From positions 1 to 64,000 of IMG/VR virus record IMGVR_UViG_3300023257_000007: a stretch of DNA of 64,000 nucleotides; one strand, written 5' to 3'. The notes beneath the pieces were generated by a model. That model did not search any database, was not told where the DNA came from, and saw nothing but the letters and a program-made list of their open reading frames with translations. Each line of letters begins with the position of its first letter. Position 1 is the first letter of the stretch. This document shows positions 26,073 through 35,608 of the stretch, piece after piece. A program made the position numbers and the translations under genes.

Positions 26073-26276
26073 ATGAAATGGGATAAATTTATTGATGATA
26101 CTTTCCAACTTAAAGAATGGGATTATATAGATCCTAAAATAATAAATTACATTAAAGATAATTTTTTGACACTTAATAAAGATAATGTTAAAAAGTTACA
26201 TCTTCCCAAAAAATTAACACACCATATTTCAATTAGATTAGAATATTTAGAAGAATTTTCTAATATTAGACCTTAA
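26073..26276 (+). CDS. Hypothetical protein
   Basis: ORF track; co-directional with neighbours. Confidence 0.5.
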   Translation: MKWDKFIDDTFQLKEWDYIDPKIINYIKDNFLTLNKDNVKKLHLPKKLTHHISIRLEYLEEFSNIRP

Positions 26277-26651
26277 TTAATATTCTCAAAGAATTCTTTA
26301 ACAGGTAATAATATATAACGTGTGCGCGCGCATGCGTATATAAAAAAATTTTTCAAAAGATTAAAATTTTTAAAAATTTTATTTCATTAATATTATCTTT
26401 AACGGTAATACTTATTTTCCTAAGAATAAAGAATTTTCAACTTATTGAATTTTTTAGTATAATTAGTATAATCTTTTAATTTTAGAAAAAAGTGACTTTT
26501 TAAGTCAAATATATAATTTTCACACTTTTATAAATTTTTAAAATTTTTAAACTTTTTAAAATTTTGAAAGTACAAGAAAATAGATTACGAAAAAATAATA
26601 TTTTTTTAAAGATTTTTCGAAATCAAAACGTTCTTTAAAATATTGTAAAAT

Positions 26652-27895
26652 ATAGTCTGTGCTTGGGCAGACGTTCATCTTCGGATGGAGCAGATAAAAC
26701 ATCGTAAGGTGTCGAAAGAGAGGAAGGTCACTTATTCTCGCCAATAGTCTTCGGATTATGGTCAATCTAAGCAAGTCTCATTTTTGTCTTGACCAACAAG
26801 ACAGCCTCAATAGAAAGGGGATAAGATGAAACAACGTGAGTAACGATCTTTGGTAAGAATAAGATGGCTCAATTGCCCGCAAGGGGAACAAAAGTTATCA
26901 AATATAGAATGGGGACATTCCAATATCGTTTAATCCACTCATTAAGTGTTCGTTGATAGATAAGAGATAGAATAGTAGTTCGAATGTGGAAAGTTAGAGC
27001 ATTATTCAGTTTCAAAGGTGTTGAAAGATGTCTTAACAAACGGCACAGTAAGTCCTCCGGGCTGAAACGCATACGAAGGGTCGTATTTTGTAAGGTGAAA
27101 CTTATGAATCGGTGGACAGGCACTTTGTGGTGATATCATTTTTTATTAGCTCACAATGGTAGAGCAGTAGTATTCTAACTAAAGGTAGATGGTTCAATTC
27201 CATCATAAAAAAAGCAAAGTCCCTGTCCGTCTGTTAAGTAAAGGTGCTTAAAACTTTACACTTCGGTGAATAAAGTGGATTCAAAGCTCGCAAGGTAGAG
27301 AATCTTTGATACAGTAGCCTCAACTTTTAACCCTAGCAGGTTATTAACGCCACGATAGTGGTGAGTGTACGCAAAATATCGAGTAACTTAATAGTACTAG
27401 TGATGTAACCACATAAAAAGTTACAGTACAGCTGGTGTACATAGTTGCCTTTCGAGGGATTATGTGGACAATTCAGGAACGAAGAATAGCAACTCTTTGA
27501 TAATCTGAAGAAAGCAAAACATATAATAAACTGTGTGTTTTACCAGTATGACAGTTTTTAGTCTCAAAATTGTTTCTCTATCAAGATAAAAACCTTGACG
27601 TGGTGATAGAGCTTTAAACTAATATTTATCAAATGTGAAAAAAGTAGTAGAAATTAAAAGACGCAACACGCAGCCCGTTCTCTGCGCTACTTCACAAAAA
27701 TGTGAACGATAAAAATCTTCACATTTAAATACACCAAGAATAACACCATCACTGTAGCCCTAAAGGAGTGATGTTGTCGCATAAAAACGATTAGTGTTAG
27801 TGTGTGTTTGAGAAGACGACGGGGGATTTCACAAAAGTAACATGAATCAAGTAGTGTGAAATAAGAAATTCCTCCAAGTTTTCTCGGAAAATTTT
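26652..27895 (+). ncRNA. Giant structured non-coding RNA (GOLLD/ROOL-like), ~1.25 kb; boundaries approximate
   Basis: No plus-strand ORF, GC clearly above flanks. UUCG hairpins at 26674, 26744, 27259, 27448; GNRA hairpins at 26699, 26876; embedded tRNA-like domain; abuts a tRNA array. Confidence 0.75.
27140..27212 (+). tRNA. tRNA-like domain embedded in the giant RNA (degenerate anticodon arm)
   Basis: TTTTTAT/ATAAAAA acceptor, GCTC/GAGC D-stem, GATGG-TTCAATT-CCATC T-arm, 6-nt anticodon loop. Confidence 0.65.
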
Positions 27896-27975
27896 TTTAT
27901 GCAAGAAATAATTTGTATATTGTCAAAAATAGAGAATAAATATTTAATATATAAAAAATAGTAAAAACAGAAACA

Positions 27976-28062
27976 ATGAATAATACTTTTAAACATAATA
28001 GTTCATCTTTTCATAAGTGGTTTAGCCGCTTCGGATCGGGAATGTTATGCCTTAAAAGTTAA
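27976..28062 (+). CDS. Leader peptide 1 (28 aa, Phe/His/Trp-rich)
   Basis: MNNTFKHNSSSFHKWFSRFGSGMLCLKS*, downstream of TAATATATA at 27945 and upstream of a terminator. Confidence 0.7.
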   Translation: MNNTFKHNSSSFHKWFSRFGSGMLCLKS

Positions 28063-28091
28063 GATTAAAAAATATTAATCAACAAAGGGAC

Positions 28092-28129
28092 AAACTCGAT
28101 TCTAACAAGATTCGGGTTTTTTGTTTTTT
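28092..28129 (+). terminator. Attenuator terminator upstream of tRNA-His/Trp/Phe
   Basis: AAACTCGATTCT / AGATTCGGGTTT stem plus U-tract. Confidence 0.78.
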
Positions 28130-28151
28130 ATAAACGTTCTTAAAAATATAT

Positions 28152-28227
28152 GGTGGTTATAGTGTTAGTGGTAGCACGGCAGGTTGTGGTTCTGTTAGGA
28201 TGGATTCAAATTCCATTAATCACCCCA
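28152..28227 (+). tRNA. tRNA-His(GUG)
   Basis: Cloverleaf; GCAGG-TTGTGGT-TCTGT; C73. Confidence 0.88.
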
Positions 28228-28237
28228 AATTTAACAC

Positions 28238-28308
28238 AGGTCTATAGTGTAACGGTAGCATAAGTGATTCCAAACCACTTGGTCCGGGTTCAAATCCTGG
28301 TAGGCCTG
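28238..28308 (+). tRNA. tRNA-Trp(CCA)
   Basis: Cloverleaf; loop TTCCAAA; T-loop TTCAAAT. Confidence 0.9.
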
Positions 28309-28377
28309 CGAGAAGTTTAAATATGGTTAAATGAAGGATGGTTAAAAGGTAGAAAAATGAAATATTAATACAAATTT

Positions 28378-28450
28378 GGAACCGTGGTGTAGGTGGTCTG
28401 CACGATACTCTGAAGAAGTATAGGTACCCGTTCAACTCGGGTCGGTTCCA
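28378..28450 (+). tRNA. tRNA-Phe(GAA)
   Basis: GGAACCG/CGGTTCC acceptor; ATACT-CTGAAGA-AGTAT. Confidence 0.88.
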
Positions 28451-28527
28451 CTTTAAACTTTTAAATTTTAATATATATTAATGTGAAGAAAGAACCAGTT
28501 TTAATGAAAAATAATAAAAATTAACAA

Positions 28528-29274
28528 ATGAAAAAATATACACAATTTAGTAAATCTTTAGAAAAAATCAATCAAAATATGGAATTATTTGAAAAAGCTA
28601 TCGATCAAAATCAAAAAGAAAAAATAGATAGATATATTAATGCAAACAATTACAAAAAAGTTCTATCAGAACTAAAACAAATTATTTTTAATTTAAAAAA
28701 AGAAATTAAAAATTCCAATTTTGATGATTTCATTTATAAACAGAACAATAAAGATATAGAAATAATATATAATCCGACTATTCGTGGTATTTTAACCTAT
28801 TTAGATGGTAAAAGAGTAGAATTTGAATATGGAAAAGAAGAGAATCAACAAAAAATCTTAAACACTATCTATATTGATGGTGAAAGAGACCCATTTTTAG
28901 ATATAACTATTCAACCACCATTTAATCAGATACATATTAATAATGGTTTGCCAGTTTTTATGAAAGGTCTAGGATTAGGTAAAAAAGTTTACAAAAAACT
29001 AATTAAAGATTTTGGTTATCTTTCTTCTTTTAAAGGAATAAAACCTTCTATTGAAAGTGATTTGGTTTGGGATACTTTAGCTGATGATAGAGAATTGTTC
29101 ACTTTTGTGAATGATAACAATATCATTTGTTTTTGGAATGAAGTAGATTATGATATTATAATTATTAAATTGAAAGAATTTTACAAAATAAAAGGACAAA
29201 AAATCTTTGATAACGATTTTAAAAAGTTATATAACTTAACTGATGAAAAAATAGAACAAATAATTAATATATAA
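28528..29274 (+). CDS. Hypothetical protein, possible GNAT-like fold, CTS-like N-terminus
   Basis: MKKYTQF start; KGLGLGKKVY resembles the acetyl-CoA loop. Confidence 0.45.
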   Translation: MKKYTQFSKSLEKINQNMELFEKAIDQNQKEKIDRYINANNYKKVLSELKQIIFNLKKEIKNSNFDDFIYKQNNKDIEIIYNPTIRGILTYLDGKRVEFEYGKEENQQKILNTIYIDGERDPFLDITIQPPFNQIHINNGLPVFMKGLGLGKKVYKKLIKDFGYLSSFKGIKPSIESDLVWDTLADDRELFTFVNDNNIICFWNEVDYDIIIIKLKEFYKIKGQKIFDNDFKKLYNLTDEKIEQIINI

Positions 29275-29292
29275 AGAAAATCAATTTTAAAC

Positions 29293-29541
29293 ATGAAAAT
29301 TAAAAGATATAATGAATCATTAATTGATAATGATAATAACACTAGAGAAGATTTCAATGAAGAAATTGATGATCTAATATCAGAATTAAAGATAAGATAT
29401 AATAATTTTAATAATTTAATTGATTCATACAAAATAATAGAAAAAAGTAAAACAGAAGAATGGGAAAAAGTTAGAAATGAACTAAGAGGCGCATTTGATG
29501 GTTTTAAAAATGAATTAATACAAAAAATTAAAAAATTTTAA
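29293..29541 (+). CDS. Hypothetical protein, CTS-like N-terminus
   Basis: MKIKRYNES. Confidence 0.7.
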   Translation: MKIKRYNESLIDNDNNTREDFNEEIDDLISELKIRYNNFNNLIDSYKIIEKSKTEEWEKVRNELRGAFDGFKNELIQKIKKF

Positions 29542-29544
29542 ATA

Positions 29545-29619
29545 ATGATTATAATTAACATAAATAGTAAATCGAAAAAGAATAGTCGTCTGAAAACGGC
29601 TCGGAATTGTATTACCTAA
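29545..29619 (+). CDS. Leader peptide 2 (24 aa, Ser/Lys control codons)
   Basis: MIIININSKSKKNSRLKTARNCIT*, overlapping alternative hairpins. Confidence 0.68.
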   Translation: MIIININSKSKKNSRLKTARNCIT

Positions 29620-29641
29620 ATTTTTAGGTACAAAGAATTAC

Positions 29642-29671
29642 AAACCGAGTCTGAAAAGATTCGGTTTTTTT
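29642..29671 (+). terminator. Attenuator terminator upstream of tRNA-Lys/Ser array
   Basis: AAACCGAGTC-TGAAAA-GATTCGGTTT plus T-tract, ending 3 nt before tRNA-Lys. Confidence 0.85.
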
Positions 29672-29673
29672 AT

Positions 29674-29751
29674 TGGCCATTAGCTCAGTAGGTTTAGAGC
29701 ATCTGCCTTTTAAGCAGAGAGTCCAGGGTTCGATCCCCTGATGGCCAACCA
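29674..29751 (+). tRNA. tRNA-Lys(UUU), CCA encoded
   Basis: Perfect cloverleaf; TCTGC-CTTTTAA-GCAGA. Confidence 0.95.
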
Positions 29752-29753
29752 AT

Positions 29754-29826
29754 GGATCTGTAGCTCAGTTGGTAGAGCTTCTGCCTTTTAAGCAGAAAGT
29801 CCAGGGTTCGAGTCCGACTAGGTCCA
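29754..29826 (+). tRNA. tRNA-Lys(UUU) second copy with mispaired T-stem (possible pseudogene)
   Basis: Same anticodon arm; T-stem CAGGG vs CCGAC pairs at only 2 of 5 positions. Confidence 0.65.
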
Positions 29827-29830
29827 CTAA

Positions 29831-29945
29831 GGCTTATAACAAATAGGTTGTATTTATAGAGCATTTGTCGGGTTACCGCATGTCACTAAAATGTATATTT
29901 TAAGAGTTACTAGAGATATATGAGGTTCGAATCCTTAATAAGCCA
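29831..29945 (+). pseudogene. Elongated tRNA-like element
   Basis: GGCTTAT/ATAAGCC acceptor and TGAGG-TTCGAAT-CCTTA T-arm around an oversized, non-canonical core. Confidence 0.5.
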
Positions 29946-29949
29946 CTAT

Positions 29950-30033
29950 GGAAAGCGTCCGGTTGGACGAGGGGCTACTCTTGAAAAGTAGTAATGGGTT
30001 ACACCATTAGGGGTTCGAATCCCTTGCTTTCCG
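29950..30033 (+). tRNA. tRNA-Ser(UGA)
   Basis: CTACT-CTTGAAA-AGTAG; long variable arm; G73. Confidence 0.92.
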
Positions 30034-30037
30034 CTAT

Positions 30038-30125
30038 GGAAGAGTACCCAAGTTGGTGAAGGGGCTGGTTTGCTAAACCAGTAGGTCTGAAATACGGCGC
30101 GTGGGTTCGAGCCCCACTTCTTCCG
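30038..30125 (+). tRNA. tRNA-Ser(GCU)
   Basis: CTGGT-TTGCTAA-ACCAG; long variable arm; G73. Confidence 0.92.
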
Positions 30126-30173
30126 CAATTAGGTTTGAAACTCAGTTGGTGACCTACTAAGAAAGATATTTCA

Positions 30174-30356
30174 TTAAACTTCTTGCCAATGGTTAACACC
30201 ATTTTTATCAGTTTGTATTTCCCACATATTACCATCATTACCTTTCATTCTAGTTCCTTCATCATGCCATGTTGCACTATCTGTAGGTCCTTTTCTACTT
30301 TCTGAATGTCTAACTGAAGCAGCACTTGCTTCTTTAAAAGTTTTTAAATGTTTCAT
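30174..30356 (-). CDS. Small protein, CTS-like N-terminus
   Basis: MKHLKTFKE. Confidence 0.7.
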   Translation of the reverse strand: MKHLKTFKEASAASVRHSESRKGPTDSATWHDEGTRMKGNDGNMWEIQTDKNGVNHWQEV

Positions 30357-31865: not shown

Positions 31866-32150
31866 ATGCAAGATAAATGTAAAATATGTGGTCGTAATGA
31901 AACAACATCATTTCATCATTTAATACCAGTAACATTACATACTAAAAAGTGGTTCAAAAAAAATTACGAAAAAGACTATATGAAATCACACGGTATAGAC
32001 TTATGCAAACAATGTCATAAGGCTATACATAAATTTTGGGATGAAAAAACTTTGGGCAAAAAATTTAATACATTAAAAAGTTTATTAGAAAATCAAAAAA
32101 TTAAAAAACACATTGAATGGGTTATAAAACTAAAACATAATAAAAAATGA
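31866..32150 (+). CDS. Small HNH-family protein
   Basis: CKIC...FHHLIP...LCKQCHKAIH. Confidence 0.75.
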   Translation: MQDKCKICGRNETTSFHHLIPVTLHTKKWFKKNYEKDYMKSHGIDLCKQCHKAIHKFWDEKTLGKKFNTLKSLLENQKIKKHIEWVIKLKHNKK

Positions 32151-32428
32151 CAAAAGACAAAACTAAAGACGAATCTAAAAACGAATCTAAAGAAAAAGAA
32201 GAAAATTTATACTCAATTATTGTATATAATGACGAAGTTAATACATTTGAACATGTTATTGGTTGTCTTATTAAATACTGTAAACATGAATTAACACAAG
32301 CAGAACAATGTACCATGATTATACACAATAATGGTAAATGTGATGTTAAAAAAGGCACATTTAAAGAATTAGAAACTCCTTATTATGCTTTACTTGATTC
32401 TGGGTTATCTGCTGAAATTGAAAATTAA
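32147..32428 (+). CDS. clpS: ClpS N-degron adaptor
   Basis: IIVYNDEVNTFEHVI...IHNNGKC...GLSAEI. Confidence 0.92.
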   Translation: MTKDKTKDESKNESKEKEENLYSIIVYNDEVNTFEHVIGCLIKYCKHELTQAEQCTMIIHNNGKCDVKKGTFKELETPYYALLDSGLSAEIEN

Positions 32429-32510
32429 ATATATGTCTAATAACATATCCTAATTTTTGACTTATTAGAAAATTTCTCGTATATTATTATAAATACTAAA
32501 ACTTCAAATC

Positions 32511-33818
32511 ATGAGAAATATACAAAAATTATCAGAAAAAGAATTAATAGTACATTTAAAATCTATCTATAATAAACAGATAGATATTTATGATAAATTT
32601 GAAAAAACAGGTGAAATTGAACCAATTATTACCGATTTTGATGATCAAGATGCATATAAATATTTTATGCAATATGCAATCTTTAAAACTCACCCAAACG
32701 CAATAGTAAAATTTAAATTTTTTAACCGTGGAAAACATAAATTTCCAGTCGGTTCAGATTATCATATTAAAAAACAAATAGAATCTATGAAAAATCTTAG
32801 ATTCACTCCTGAAATAGAAAGATCATTTAGAAAAAAATTTTCAAATATGAAAGGTGAATCTTATTTTGATGAATCTTTTTATGGTTTTTTAAGAAGTTAT
32901 AGATACGATCCATCTGAAGTTAAAGTAACTCAAACAGGAGAAGATATCGAAATAGAAATAACTGGTTCTTGGTTAAAAACAATTTATTGGGAAACACAAA
33001 TAATGCCGATTTTAACAGAAACTTGGTATATGTTAACTGATCAATATAAAAATATTCATAATTTTGATCATCTATATGATACACACAGAGACAAATATCG
33101 AAGTTTTATAACAGCCGAATCTAATATTGCAGAATTTGGTTTAAGAAGAAGATATTCAAAACTAATACAAGAATTTATCAATATACATTTTATGTGGGAA
33201 TCACCAGCTAGATATATTGGTACGTCTAATTGTATGTTCGCTAGAAAATTTAATGTTAAAGCCATTGGAACACAAGCTCATGAATGGATAATGTTTCATG
33301 CCGCAAAATATGGACCAGAACTAGCAAATAAGATATCTTTAGAAAATTGGGTTAAAGTTTACAGAGGAGAATTAGGTATTGCGTTATCTGATACTTATGG
33401 TACAGACAATTTCTTAAAATCATTTGATACTTTACATAGTAAATTATTTGATGGTGTTAGATGGGATTCTGGTGATTTTAAATTATTTACTGATAAAATA
33501 ATTGGACACTATAAATCATATGGAATTAATCCTAAATCCAAAACAATTGTCTATTCTGATGGTATAAATTCATTTTTAAAAATACGAGATATTATAAGAT
33601 ATGCAAGTGATAAAATTAAATGCACGTTAGGAATTGGTACTTATTTAACAAATGATATTGGTGTACCAACTATGAATATTGTTATTAAAATGACAGAAGC
33701 TAAACCTGAAAAAATGGATTGGAGATATTGTATAAAGACATCTGATTCATCTGGTAAATATACTTATACTGACAAAAAAACATTAAACAGATACTTAGAA
33801 GATTTGAATATAAATTAA
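32511..33818 (+). CDS. pncB: Nicotinate phosphoribosyltransferase
   Basis: TDFDDQDAYK, EFGLRRR, GTQAHEW, SDTY, GVRWDSGD, YSDG, GIGTYLTND. Confidence 0.92.
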   Translation: MRNIQKLSEKELIVHLKSIYNKQIDIYDKFEKTGEIEPIITDFDDQDAYKYFMQYAIFKTHPNAIVKFKFFNRGKHKFPVGSDYHIKKQIESMKNLRFTPEIERSFRKKFSNMKGESYFDESFYGFLRSYRYDPSEVKVTQTGEDIEIEITGSWLKTIYWETQIMPILTETWYMLTDQYKNIHNFDHLYDTHRDKYRSFITAESNIAEFGLRRRYSKLIQEFINIHFMWESPARYIGTSNCMFARKFNVKAIGTQAHEWIMFHAAKYGPELANKISLENWVKVYRGELGIALSDTYGTDNFLKSFDTLHSKLFDGVRWDSGDFKLFTDKIIGHYKSYGINPKSKTIVYSDGINSFLKIRDIIRYASDKIKCTLGIGTYLTNDIGVPTMNIVIKMTEAKPEKMDWRYCIKTSDSSGKYTYTDKKTLNRYLEDLNIN

Positions 33819-33863
33819 ACTAGATAAGAATATAATAATAAAAATAAAAAATAATATAATATT

Positions 33864-34109
33864 ATGGTAAAAAAACAATACATGGGTAAAACAGTGAAAG
33901 AACATTTCGGTTATAAAATAAAACACATGATTCAATTCAGAATGTCAAGAGGACCCAAAGGAAAAGAAATATCTCATCAAGAACCTAGCGGATATTTTGG
34001 TGTATATGCAGGCAAAAATCTATTGTGTGGAAATAAAGAATTCAAAAAAGTAAAAGATGCAGAACAATTTTTATTCAATTATATTAAAAATAAGAAATAT
34101 GAAATTTAA
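33864..34109 (+). CDS. Hypothetical protein
   Basis: Co-directional ORF in the NAD cluster. Confidence 0.6.
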   Translation: MVKKQYMGKTVKEHFGYKIKHMIQFRMSRGPKGKEISHQEPSGYFGVYAGKNLLCGNKEFKKVKDAEQFLFNYIKNKKYEI

Positions 34110-34656
34110 CAACAGACCAAATAAATCAATAAAAAATGATGGTACAACACATTGGATTTCAAGAAGTTGTGCTGTTGTTTCCTATGTATCAGCAAAAATC
34201 GGGAGTGATTTTTATATTTTAGTAGGACAAAGAGGACAAGGCACACCAGACTGTAAAGGTTTGTGGAATTTACCTTGTGGTTATCTAGATTGGAATGAAA
34301 GTGGTAGAGAAGCTTTCTTTAGAGAAATGTGGGAAGAAACTGGTATAAATTGCGAAAAACTTCTAAAAAATTACAAAATTTTTATAAATACAGAAGAACC
34401 TTGGTATATTGATACTAATCCAGACTCACATCTTCAAAATATTTCATTACATTATTCAATTGTATTTGATGCAACTAATTCTATATTACCAGAATTCAGT
34501 ACAGAAAATAGTGAACCTGATGAAGTTGAAAATTTAATGTGGATTAAGATTAAAGACGCTCATAAACTGCATTTTGGTTTTGATCATAAAAAAAGGGTAA
34601 AAGTCTTCAACGAAAAATTTATAATACCATTAGAAAATTCTCTTAAAATATCTTAA
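34099..34656 (+). CDS. NUDIX hydrolase (ADP-ribose pyrophosphatase-like)
   Basis: WNLPCGYLDWNESGREAFFREMWEETG; likely ATG at 34099. Confidence 0.88.
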   Translation: MKFNNRPNKSIKNDGTTHWISRSCAVVSYVSAKIGSDFYILVGQRGQGTPDCKGLWNLPCGYLDWNESGREAFFREMWEETGINCEKLLKNYKIFINTEEPWYIDTNPDSHLQNISLHYSIVFDATNSILPEFSTENSEPDEVENLMWIKIKDAHKLHFGFDHKKRVKVFNEKFIIPLENSLKIS

Positions 34657-34744
34657 TAATTGACATATGTTATATAACATACCAAAAAATATTACAATTA
34701 TAAAAATTTTTCGTATATTTAATTAAACAATAAAAAATATAATT

Positions 34745-35608
34745 ATGAAAAATATAATAAATTACGACAAAGTACTTGAAAATTCAAGATTTTTACTAAA
34801 AGAAAAAATTACAAGAACTAAACTTAAATCATTAGTATTGGGTATTAGTGGTGGAGTTGATTCAGCAATTGTTGCAGCAATTGCTAAACCTATATGTGAT
34901 GAATTAAATATTCCTTTAATAGGAAGATATATTCATATAGAAAGTAATAAGAAAGAAGAAAAAGAAAGAGCTGAAGATATTGGAAAAGCGTTTTGCACTG
35001 ATTTCCAATCAATTGATCTTACAGAATACTTTGATACATTAAAAAATCTAGATGAAATGGATAATGAAGGTTCTCCTTATTCTGAATATGATTATCAATC
35101 AAAATTAATTAGACTTGGTAATATAAAAGCTAGAACAAGAATGATTTATCTTTATAATTTAGCTTCAAAAAATGGTGGTTTAGTATTAGGTACAGACAAT
35201 TTAACTGAATATTATTTGGGATTTTGGACTTTGCACGGTGATGTTGGTGATTTTGGTTTAATTCAAAATCTTTGGAAGTCTGAAGTACATGAATTAACAT
35301 TACATTTAGCTAAAAGTTTAAATGAAAAAGGTAAAGTGTTAGTTGATTGTGCAATGGCAAATGCTACTGATGGTCTTGGAATAAGTGAGACTGATCTAGA
35401 ACAAATTATGCCAGATTGGAAAGAAAGACATAATACAACTGCAAGTGGTTATTCAGAAATTGATAAAAAATTACAATCTTATTTAAAAGATATTAGTAAA
35501 GGAGAAAACATTTCAAAATATAATAATGATCCAGTAATTGAAAGACATAGATCATCTTTCTTCAAAAGAATAAACCCAGAAAGTATAGATAGAGAAGAAT
35601 TAATTTAA
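34745..35608 (+). CDS. nadE: NH3-dependent NAD+ synthetase
   Basis: VLGISGGVDS, GNIKARTRM, GTDNLTE, GFWTLHGD, ATDGL. Confidence 0.94.
   Translation: MKNIINYDKVLENSRFLLKEKITRTKLKSLVLGISGGVDSAIVAAIAKPICDELNIPLIGRYIHIESNKKEEKERAEDIGKAFCTDFQSIDLTEYFDTLKNLDEMDNEGSPYSEYDYQSKLIRLGNIKARTRMIYLYNLASKNGGLVLGTDNLTEYYLGFWTLHGDVGDFGLIQNLWKSEVHELTLHLAKSLNEKGKVLVDCAMANATDGLGISETDLEQIMPDWKERHNTTASGYSEIDKKLQSYLKDISKGENISKYNNDPVIERHRSSFFKRINPESIDREELI

What the first reader, a model, noticed from the sequence alone, without database searches (positions are those of the whole stretch)
29545..30125. Codon-matched attenuator 2: a Ser/Lys leader peptide gates tRNA-Lys(UUU) x2, -Ser(UGA) and -Ser(GCU)
Seen: a 24-codon ORF MIIININSKSKKNSRLK... 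(29545-29619) whose codons 8-14 are AGT AAA TCG AAA AAG AAT AGT. These sample every anticodon in the array behind it: AGT for Ser-GCU, TCG for Ser-UGA, AAA/AAG for Lys-UUU. A classic three-way architecture follows. 1:2 hairpin: AGTCGT (29584-89) with ACGGCT (29596-601). 2:3 antiterminator: GGCTCGG (29598-604) with CCGAGTC (29645-51). 3:4 terminator: 29642-71, ending 3 nt before tRNA-Lys. A ribosome stalled on the Ser/Lys codons would cover segment 1 and free segment 2. Known: tRNA-Lys(UUU) is the target of PrrC and of PARIS AriB. Lys codons are common in this genome, so this case alone is weaker. Recurrence of the design with a different, matching codon set at 27976 is the main argument.
Basis: partly seen in the sequence, partly recalled or inferred. 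Interest (0 to 1): 0.9.

Follow-up and report, generated by a model that had tools for sequence, protein, structure and literature searches.

The report
Leader-peptide attenuator gating phage tRNA genes
A short translated leader and a switchable terminator sit in front of a huge phage's Lys and Ser tRNA genes, and related phages keep the same device with leader codons that track the tRNAs behind it, so the phage probably makes these tRNAs only when ribosomes run short of them.

Summary

Taken alone, this locus is only suggestive. K+S content gives p=0.11 and antiterminator strength gives p=0.012.

Relatives settle the question. The window is part of a ~345 kb, 23% GC huge phage. Primase-anchored loci from related phages carry the same tRNA island (Lys, His, Phe, Ser, Trp). 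I found at least 25 homologous "short ORF + terminator" units, all directly upstream of tRNAs.

- **Structure:** the antiterminator (2:3) and terminator (3:4) pairings both covary. They are 92% and 90% paired, every pair shows double changes, and 0/500 shuffles match.
- **Codons:** 63% of leader residues 2-18 are cognate to the downstream tRNAs, against 22% expected (permutation p<5e-5).
- **Nesting:** promoter-proximal leaders carry codons for all downstream tRNAs. Internal leaders, such as this one, carry codons only for the remaining tRNAs. K-rich leaders precede Lys+Ser arrays and S-rich leaders precede Ser-only arrays.
- **Closest relative:** it keeps this leader with identical stems and three changed loops.

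The best reading is a ribosome-mediated transcription attenuator that controls tRNA genes. I found no report of such a device. Everything here is computational. The proposed link to PrrC or PARIS is untested.

The parts
29545..29619 (+). Leader ORF 2: 24 codons, ATG to TAA. It has no own promoter and lies internal to the tRNA operon.
   Evidence: The orthologue in L136 has 23 codons, and there the ORF starts 27 nt after tRNA-Phe. It scores 93 bits against family model R1.
29566..29586 (+). Regulatory codons 8-14 (S K S K K N S), the proposed stalling site.
   Evidence: Among four homologous leaders the K:S ratio tracks the Lys/Ser content of the array behind them.
29584..29589 (+). Segment 1 (AGTCGT), the 5' arm of the 1:2 hairpin.
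   Evidence: The closing pair changes U-A to C-G in L137_b and L137_c.
29596..29604 (+). Segment 2. Bases 29596-601 pair with segment 1. Bases 29598-604 pair with segment 3 to form the antiterminator.
   Evidence: The 2:3 helix is 92.2% paired across 17 units, 7/7 pairs show changes on both sides, and 0/500 shuffles match.
29613..29631 (+). Middle hairpin (7 bp) that encloses the leader's stop codon.
   Evidence: In L136 the stem is conserved and the loop is changed. Analogous hairpins occur in other units.
29642..29671 (+). Segments 3:4: intrinsic terminator with an 11-bp stem, GAAA loop and T7 tail.
   Evidence: It is the strongest plus-strand terminator in the window. The 3:4 helix is 90.4% paired and 11/11 pairs covary.
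29674..29827 (+). Two tRNA-Lys(UUU) genes (29674-29751 and 29754-29827).
29950..30126 (+). tRNA-Ser(UGA) 29950-30034 and tRNA-Ser(GCU) 30038-30126.
27976..28062 (+). Leader ORF 1 (28 codons, core FKHNSSSFHKWFS). This is the promoter-proximal paralogue and carries codons for all five tRNA species of the operon.
   Evidence: It scores 109 bits against R1. L136 has an orthologue.
28094..28125 (+). Terminator of attenuator 1. Its 5' arm pairs with GATCGGGA (28034-41) inside leader ORF 1.
28153..28451 (+). tRNA-His, tRNA-Trp and tRNA-Phe, the first gated block.
27920..27954 (+). Promoter-like stretch upstream of leader 1: TTGTCA, 17 nt, TTTAAT, overlapping the family's TATATAA motif. This is inferred only.
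   Evidence: A conserved A-tract-YGAC ... AAATATATAA motif sits 20-65 nt upstream of promoter-proximal leaders and is absent before internal leaders.

Best explanation
The region 29545-29671 is a ribosome-mediated (leader-peptide) transcription attenuator. It lies inside a phage tRNA operon and gates tRNA-Lys(UUU) x2, tRNA-Ser(UGA) and tRNA-Ser(GCU). It belongs to a family found in a clade of huge phages.

**Shown by sequence and comparison**
- A conserved short ORF.
- An intrinsic terminator that abuts the first tRNA.
- A segment inside the 3' part of the ORF that copies the terminator's 3' arm and covaries with the terminator's 5' arm.
- A 1:2 hairpin whose 5' arm overlaps or abuts the regulatory codons.
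- Leader codon content that follows the identity of the downstream tRNAs.

**Inferred mechanism**
- RNA polymerase enters from upstream. In the relative L136 it comes straight out of tRNA-Phe. In this window it first crosses two inserted ORFs.
- A ribosome loads at ATG 29545. This phage's genes do not use Shine-Dalgarno sites.
- If charged Lys and Ser tRNAs are plentiful, the ribosome runs to the TAA at 29617. There its footprint covers segment 2, the terminator 3:4 forms, and transcription stops at the U7 tract.
- If there is no translation, 1:2 forms and the terminator again forms.
- If the ribosome stalls on codons about 10-14 (K/S), it covers segment 1. Segment 2 then pairs with segment 3 before segment 4 is made, and the polymerase reads into the tRNAs.

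The result is demand-driven feedback: the phage makes replacement tRNAs when decoding of exactly those codons is slow.

The operon is gated in a nested way. Attenuator 1 (27976) carries F, K, H, S and W codons and gates the whole operon. Attenuator 2 carries only K and S codons and gates only what remains.
For: 1. **Relatives and synteny.**
   - The primase alignment A1 recovered relatives with the same tRNA set.
   - L136 has 73% primase identity and the same ClpS-NAPRTase-NUDIX-NadE synteny.
   - L136 has orthologues of both leaders. For leader 2 all stems are identical, all three hairpin loops differ, and the flanks are diverged.
2. **Family size and specificity.**
   - 17 units were catalogued. 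L034, L037, L201 (two units), L203, L207 and two units in GenBank LR745206.1 were added later.
   - Every R1 hit of at least 41 bits with downstream sequence lies directly upstream of tRNAs. Weaker hits are ordinary gene-end terminators.
3. **Covariation in the MAFFT alignment A2.**
   - 2:3 is 92.2% paired, 7/7 pairs have changes on both sides, 0/500 shuffles match, and slid controls give 4-54%.
   - 3:4 is 90.4% paired and 11/11 pairs covary.
4. **Alignment-free swap test.** Cognate duplexes average -10.06 kcal/mol against -6.66 for permuted pairs, p<5e-5. At least 8 distinct terminator stems each have a matching segment 2.
5. **Codon-tRNA match.**
   - Residues 2-18 are cognate in 182/289 cases against 63.7 expected. 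Permuting arrays among leaders gives p<5e-5.
   - Using split arrays only gives p=1e-4.
   - Trp codons are perfectly concordant: 11 leaders with, 6 without.
   - For leader-2-type units, arrays with Lys+Ser have K4-5/S3 and Ser-only arrays have K2/S7-9.
   - SYSSSSSS precedes an array of Ser(UGA)+Ser(GCU) only.
6. **Reading frame.** There are 0 stops in frame 1 against 37 and 69 in frames 2 and 3 over 441 codons. Synonymous variation occurs at conserved H, K and S positions.
7. **Architecture.** Spacing is uniform across units: segment 1 at codons 9-15, segment 2 0-25 nt before the stop, terminator about 30-40 nt later.
8. **Nascent fold.** In the transcript truncated at 29655 the minimum-energy fold is the 2:3 structure.
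9. **No room for a promoter.** Only 2 nt separate the U-tract from tRNA-Lys, so no promoter fits between them.
Against: - Nothing is experimental. Translation, termination and regulation are all inferred.
- At this locus alone the codon enrichment is not significant (p=0.11), and leader 1 has more K+S than leader 2.
- The units are phylogenetically related, so the permutation p-values overstate independence. With 5 representative split units the match ranks 3rd of 120.
- With segment 1 masked, the full-length minimum-energy fold still contains the terminator (-21.1 against about -18.3 kcal/mol). Readthrough therefore has to be kinetic.
- One orthologue (leader 1 of L136) has only a weak 2:3 pairing (-5.2 kcal/mol).
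- One array (Trp-Ile-Ile in L139) has the terminator but no leader ORF.
- Many relatives have a conserved motif between terminator and first tRNA that could be a promoter or processing site. It is absent at this leader.
- The host is unknown, and so is the degree of transcription-translation coupling in it.
Confidence: 0.8

Rival explanations
1. The short ORF encodes a conserved micro-protein with its own function, and the hairpin is simply that gene's terminator. The tRNAs would then be expressed independently, by leaky readthrough or from their own promoter.
For: The ORF, its start context and its frame are conserved. A conserved GTTCTTTGA-type motif lies between terminator and tRNA in many relatives and could be a promoter.
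Against: This does not explain why a segment inside the ORF covaries with the terminator's 5' arm. It does not explain why peptide composition changes with the downstream tRNA set, including poly-Ser before Ser-only arrays. The peptide's 3' half is poorly conserved as protein but conserved as stems. At this leader only 2 nt separate the U-tract from the tRNA.
Confidence: 0.07
2. It is an RNA switch (terminator/antiterminator) controlled by something other than a translating ribosome. Candidates are a phage or host protein, direct tRNA binding as in a T-box, or a processive antitermination factor that times tRNA expression. The ORF would be incidental.
For: Covariation proves the two alternative helices but not what selects between them. 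Huge phages often carry their own transcription factors. The full-length thermodynamics favour the terminator.
Against: The open frame is kept in all units although the other two frames carry 37 and 69 stops. Synonymous changes occur at conserved codons. Codon content tracks tRNA identity. No T-box or other Rfam cis-regulatory family matches.
Confidence: 0.08
3. It is an ordinary terminator of the upstream 248-aa/82-aa genes, followed by tRNAs, with a chance ORF in AT-rich DNA.
For: Taken alone, the K/S content is unremarkable (p=0.11), and intrinsic terminators of this type end other genes in the window.
Against: In L136 the same leader and terminator exist without those genes, directly after tRNA-Phe. 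The unit belongs to a family of at least 25 members always found before tRNAs. The covariation and codon tracking also argue against chance.
Confidence: 0.02

Closest known systems
Leader-peptide attenuators of amino-acid biosynthesis operons (trpL, hisL, pheL, thrL, leuL, ilvL; textbook, from my own knowledge)
   Same: A short ORF with regulatory codons. Mutually exclusive 1:2, 2:3 and 3:4 hairpins. An intrinsic terminator just before the regulated genes. A stop codon placed so that a finishing ribosome covers segment 2.
   Different: - The regulated products are tRNAs, not enzymes, so the device reports tRNA supply and feeds back on it.
- Up to six amino acids are sensed in one leader.
- Units are nested inside one operon, with codon sets that shrink as tRNAs are passed.
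- Tandem double units occur (L063, L201).
- The device is carried by a virus.
- There is no sequence or Rfam relationship to these families.
pheM leader of the E. coli pheST operon (attenuation of an aminoacyl-tRNA synthetase; from my own knowledge)
   Same: Leader-peptide attenuation applied to a component of the translation apparatus, responding to charged tRNA.
   Different: It controls a synthetase, not tRNA genes. It senses a single amino acid. It is cellular.
T-box riboswitches
   Same: A terminator/antiterminator decision that depends on the state of a specific tRNA and controls translation-related genes.
   Different: A T-box binds uncharged tRNA directly, without translation. Here an ORF is conserved and no T-box motif or Rfam hit is present.
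Phage tRNA arrays as codon-usage or anti-defence cargo (for example T5 tRNA-Lys against PARIS, T4 repair against PrrC; from my own knowledge)
   Same: Phage-encoded tRNA-Lys(UUU) and others that can replace host tRNAs.
   Different: Those reports concern the tRNAs themselves. I found no description of a sensing device in front of them.

Membership tests
Ribosome-mediated (leader-peptide) transcription attenuator | A short ORF in the leader, with a conserved start and frame. | tested here: met
   The ORF is 24 codons here. All 17 aligned units have ORFs of 19-33 codons. Frame 1 has 0 stops against 37 and 69 in frames 2 and 3.
Ribosome-mediated (leader-peptide) transcription attenuator | Regulatory codons cognate to the regulated product. 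| tested here: met
   Across the family, 63% of residues are cognate against 22% expected, permutation p<5e-5. Among leader-2-type units the K:S ratio tracks Lys/Ser content. At this locus alone the enrichment is only p=0.11.
Ribosome-mediated (leader-peptide) transcription attenuator | An intrinsic terminator between the leader and the regulated genes. | tested here: met
   An 11-bp stem plus U7 lies 2 nt before tRNA-Lys. The helix covaries.
Ribosome-mediated (leader-peptide) transcription attenuator | An antiterminator mutually exclusive with the terminator and conserved by covariation. | tested here: met
   plus the nascent-transcript fold.
Ribosome-mediated (leader-peptide) transcription attenuator | An anti-antiterminator (1:2) whose 5' arm lies at or just after the regulatory codons. 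| tested here: inconclusive
   It is predicted in 17/17 units at codons 9-15. One U-A to C-G compensation is seen in the leader-2/b/c subgroup. The register differs between subfamilies, so no family-wide covariation count was possible.
Ribosome-mediated (leader-peptide) transcription attenuator | Readthrough depends on ribosome stalling in the leader. | not testable with these tools
   This needs reporter or in vitro coupled assays.
Rfam amino-acid leader families (Trp, His, Thr, Leu, Phe leaders and others) | A match to the covariance model. | tested here: not met
   No such hit at the gathering threshold over the window, nor at E<=1 over 26200-30200.
T-box riboswitch | A match to the T-box model (specifier loop and T-box sequence). 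| tested here: not met
   No hit.

The most novel reading that the evidence does not exclude
These attenuators may be a viral sensor of host tRNA depletion. When a host defence such as an anticodon nuclease, or phage-induced turnover, removes tRNA-Lys, His, Phe, Ser or Trp, ribosomes stall on the leader and the phage switches on exactly the replacement tRNAs. The nested and tandem gates would then act as a combinatorial, per-anticodon supply controller. That would be the first case of tRNA genes regulated by leader-peptide attenuation, and the first inducible counter-defence built on it.
Probability: 0.3. Interest if true: 0.95.

Novelty: new variant of a known kind. Interest (0 to 1): 0.88.

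Why it matters
Leader-peptide attenuation is a textbook mechanism, but it is known for enzymes that make amino acids. Here the same logic appears to control tRNA genes themselves, in viruses.

- It would show that phages regulate their tRNA cargo by demand rather than expressing it constitutively.
- It gives a directly testable handle on why huge phages carry particular tRNAs: codon supply, host shut-off or defence evasion.
- It shows a modular design. Nested and tandem gates have codon sets that evolve with the gene order behind them, and this could be reused as a synthetic sensor of tRNA availability.
- It provides a simple computational signature for annotating phage tRNA islands: a short ORF, a terminator and cognate tRNAs.

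Tried and rejected
- **Single-protein searches of IMG/VR** with the 248-aa ORF, the primase and NAPRTase returned only identical copies of the same phage. All other database copies are 100% identical over 25.5-31 kb, so close relatives give no covariation.
- **Homologues of the 248-aa ORF** are not syntenic and have no tRNAs nearby. This family is multicopy and is an insertion here.
- **GenBank phages:** blastn with the leader regions found only tRNA similarity or nothing. The primase neighbourhoods of LR756501, LR756504, LR756502 and LR745206 hold no homologous island. The one tRNA array next to the primase in LR756501 has a plain promoter-to-terminator layout.
- **Bacteroidetes-type promoter motif** (TTTG ... 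TAnnTTTG) is not enriched in the window. The sigma-70 scan is at chance level.
- **The pattern ATG-N6-ACTTTTAAACATA** in IMG/VR gave 61 hits, but only the known phages were real. The rest were coding-strand coincidences.
- **The 117-nt tRNA-like element** at 29832-29948 could not be typed by ARAGORN (with or without introns), Rfam or folding.
- **Attenuator 1 of this window** showed no significant antiterminator gain in the shuffle test (p=0.46). The duplex and covariation tests do place a pairing there.
- **Literature:** four searches and one paper found no description of leader-peptide control of tRNA genes.

Full report
**1. What is in the window**

The window is 23% GC. It is part of a roughly 345 kb phage genome held as two IMG/VR entries and several metagenome contigs.
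- It encodes a primase, NAPRTase, a NUDIX hydrolase, NAD synthase and ClpS.
- Its closest GenBank relatives are the 630-735 kb 'huge phages' LR756501, LR756504, LR756502 and LR745206 (primase 40-45% identity), followed by the Lak phages.
- Only 4 of 70 ORFs have a Shine-Dalgarno-like site.
- On the plus strand between 27.0 and 30.1 kb the order is as follows:
  - a GOLLD RNA with a nested CUA-anticodon tRNA;
  - leader 1, its terminator, and tRNA-His, Trp and Phe;
  - two ORFs of 248 and 82 aa;
  - leader 2, its terminator, and tRNA-Lys, tRNA-Lys, a tRNA-like element, tRNA-Ser(UGA) and tRNA-Ser(GCU).

**2. The observation**

- The 24-codon ORF begins 3 nt after the stop of the 82-aa ORF.
- The minimum-energy fold of 29540-29673 is three separate hairpins: 1:2, a middle hairpin over the leader's stop codon, and the terminator. 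Its z-score is -3.3.
- The terminator is the strongest plus-strand one in the window. Its U7 tract ends 2 nt before tRNA-Lys, which leaves no room for a promoter.

**3. Single-locus statistics are only suggestive**

- The coding background is K 12.0% and S 5.5%.
- Leader 2 has 7/24 K+S (binomial p=0.11). Of 218 small ATG ORFs in the window, 6.9% are as rich, and 0.9% have a 6-of-7 run.
- Leader 1 has even more K+S (9/28).
- Adding the terminator's 5' arm to the upstream RNA gains -8.2 kcal/mol, better than 98.8% of dinucleotide shuffles. For leader 1 the same test gives p=0.46.
- In a transcript ending at 29655 the minimum-energy fold is the 2:3 structure. In the full-length RNA the terminator wins even when segment 1 is masked. 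Any antitermination must therefore be kinetic, as in the classical systems.

**4. Finding relatives**

- Close copies are all identical, and homologues of the 248-aa ORF are not syntenic.
- The primase has many homologues at 45-77% identity.
- An alignment of these (A1) was used to fetch primase loci with 10 kb flanks from metagenomes and IMG/VR. Three more loci were fetched by exact look-up.
- Fourteen loci had tRNAs. Most carried the same set: Lys(UUU), His, Phe, Ser(UGA/GCU) and Trp, in varying order.
- L136 (primase 73% identity) is syntenic with the window through ClpS, NAPRTase, NUDIX and NAD synthase.

**5. A conserved leader family**

- Upstream of these arrays there is always a short ORF followed by a terminator.
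- The core peptides are:
  - KHSKSFKFWS (L061, L063, L064, L131, L201, L203, L207);
  - KHIS.FSHKWS (L059, L060);
  - FKHNSSSFHKWFS (window leader 1 and L136);
  - IHINKIKTHKWF (L058_a, L137_a, L034, L037);
  - FKHKHFKF (L137_b, L139_b, L058_b);
  - SYSSSSSS (L137_c);
  - NSKSKKNS and NKSKKSS (window leader 2 and L136).
- Leader 2 shares its first 30 nt, at about 80% identity, with the KHSKS-type leader L063_b (read by eye from the rows).
- A covariance model built from 17 aligned units (A2, R1) found the units again at 69-109 bits, and it also found new ones:
  - L034 at 63 bits, with a truncated copy in L037;
  - L201 (two units), L203 and L207 at 92-105 bits;
  - two units in GenBank LR745206.1, at 342380-342537 and 343630-343757, at 55 and 41 bits.
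- All of these lie directly before tRNAs where downstream sequence exists. Hits below 37 bits were ordinary gene-end terminators.

**6. Structure**

- In the MAFFT alignment, which used sequence only, the 2:3 helix is paired in 92.2% of cells. All 7 pairs show changes on both sides, 0/500 shuffles reach the observed values, and sliding the partner by 1-3 columns drops pairing to 4-54%.
- The 3:4 helix is 90.4% paired and 11/11 pairs covary.
- At least eight different terminator stems each have a matching segment 2 inside their own ORF. Cognate duplexes average -10.06 kcal/mol against -6.66 for permuted partners (p<5e-5).
- Every unit has the same layout: segment 1 at codons 9-15, segment 2 0-25 nt before the stop, and the terminator about 30-40 nt later.
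- Between the window and L136, the structured part of leader 2 is about 92% identical by my count. Its differences are confined to the three loops, while the flanks and the ORF's 5' part diverge.
- L137_b and L139_b differ by a U-A to C-G compensation in the terminator.

**7. Codon-tRNA tracking**

- Counting all tRNAs downstream in the island, residues 2-18 of the leaders are cognate in 182/289 cases (63%) against 63.7 expected. No permutation of arrays among leaders reached this in 20,000 trials.
- With strictly local arrays the result holds, and for split arrays only p=1e-4. With five representative units the true pairing ranks 3rd of 120.
- Trp codons are present in the 11 leaders with a Trp tRNA downstream and absent from the 6 without. 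His and Phe codons are absent from leader-2-type units.
- The pattern is nested.
  - Promoter-proximal leaders carry codons for everything downstream. They are preceded by a conserved promoter-like motif.
  - Internal leaders carry only the codons for what remains. In L136, L139 and L058 they begin within 30 nt after a tRNA.
- Among the four leader-2-type units, K4-5/S3 precedes Lys+Ser arrays. K2/S7-9 precedes Ser-only arrays and the Arg+Ser array.

**8. Translation**

- The frame is open in all units, while the other two frames carry 37 and 69 stops.
- H, K and S positions show synonymous variation: CAT/CAC, AAA/AAG, and six different Ser codons.
- The start context (TAGAAA-N2-3-ATG) is conserved.

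**9. Interpretation**

The best-supported explanation is a leader-peptide transcription attenuator that gates tRNA genes, with leader 2 as the inner gate for Lys and Ser. The steps involving ribosome position and kinetics are inferred from geometry and from textbook attenuation.

Three rivals are much less consistent with the covariation and codon tracking: a micro-protein gene with its own terminator, an RNA switch read by another factor, and a chance ORF. They cannot be excluded without experiments.

**10. Novelty**

No Rfam leader or T-box family matches. Four literature searches and one paper gave no report of leader-peptide control of tRNA genes. The mechanism class is known. The regulated target, the multi-amino-acid and nested design, and the viral setting are new. 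All conclusions are computational.

Noticed in passing
window 27073-27541 (+), probably extending to about 27870: A GOLLD RNA (RF02032) matches the full model at 93.9 bits, E=1.9e-24, which is below the gathering score of 150. The CUA-anticodon tRNA (27139-27213) is nested in its variable insertion. It lies directly upstream, on the same strand, of the tRNA operon. The ORF-poor, GC-richer stretch 26300-27900 fits this.
   Followed up: partly
window 29832-29948 (+): A 117-nt tRNA-like element with a 7-bp acceptor stem and a canonical T-arm lies between tRNA-Lys 2 and tRNA-Ser(UGA). It is not called by ARAGORN (with or without introns) or Rfam, its fold z-score is -1.1, and it is absent from L136. 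It may be a tRNA with an insertion or a decayed tRNA.
   Followed up: partly
window 27139-27213 and 55154-55226 (+): There are two tRNAs with anticodon CUA (ARAGORN labels them 'Pyl'), which would be amber suppressors. TAG ends 6 of 63 long ORFs in the window. This suggests partial TAG recoding, as described for some huge phages.
   Followed up: no
window 28528-29541 (+): The 248-aa and 82-aa ORFs sit inside the tRNA operon, between tRNA-Phe and leader 2. They are absent at this place in L136. The 248-aa family is multicopy in huge phages, with three tandem copies in L017.
   Followed up: partly
L063, L137, L131, L059, L058, L207 (between terminator and first tRNA); weakly at window 28129-28150: A conserved motif, GTT(C/A)TTTGA(C/T)ATATTGGA-like, follows many terminators and some tRNAs. 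Its spacing does not fit a sigma-70 or Bacteroidetes-type promoter for the tRNA. Its function is unexplained, and it is absent after leader 2.
   Followed up: partly
L034, L037, L058, L137, L063, L131, L203; window 27920-27954: A conserved promoter-like motif (A-tract, YGAC, about 12-17 nt, AAATATATAA) lies 20-65 nt upstream of promoter-proximal leaders. It is absent before internal leaders.
   Followed up: partly
L063 2458-2758 and L201 3178-3488: Two complete leader-terminator units occur in tandem before one tRNA array. This recalls tandem riboswitches.
   Followed up: no
GenBank LR745206.1 342380-342537 and 343630-343757 (L210): A public huge-phage genome carries two units. The first precedes His-Phe-His-Phe-Trp-Trp-Lys x4. 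The second is Ser-rich with CGC and CGA codons and precedes Arg(ACG) and Ser tRNAs (three called by ARAGORN, a fourth read by eye).
   Followed up: yes
whole window; L137, L139, L011: The phage's genes do not use Shine-Dalgarno sites (4/70). Relatives encode proteins with SprB, CHU_C and Por_Secre_tail domains, which are type IX secretion sorting domains. One relative was binned with an Ignavibacteria MAG. Together these point to a host in the Bacteroidota/Ignavibacteria (FCB) group.
   Followed up: partly
window 32147-35608 (+): A ClpS, NAPRTase, NUDIX hydrolase and NAD synthase cluster (NAD salvage) is syntenic in L136.
   Followed up: no
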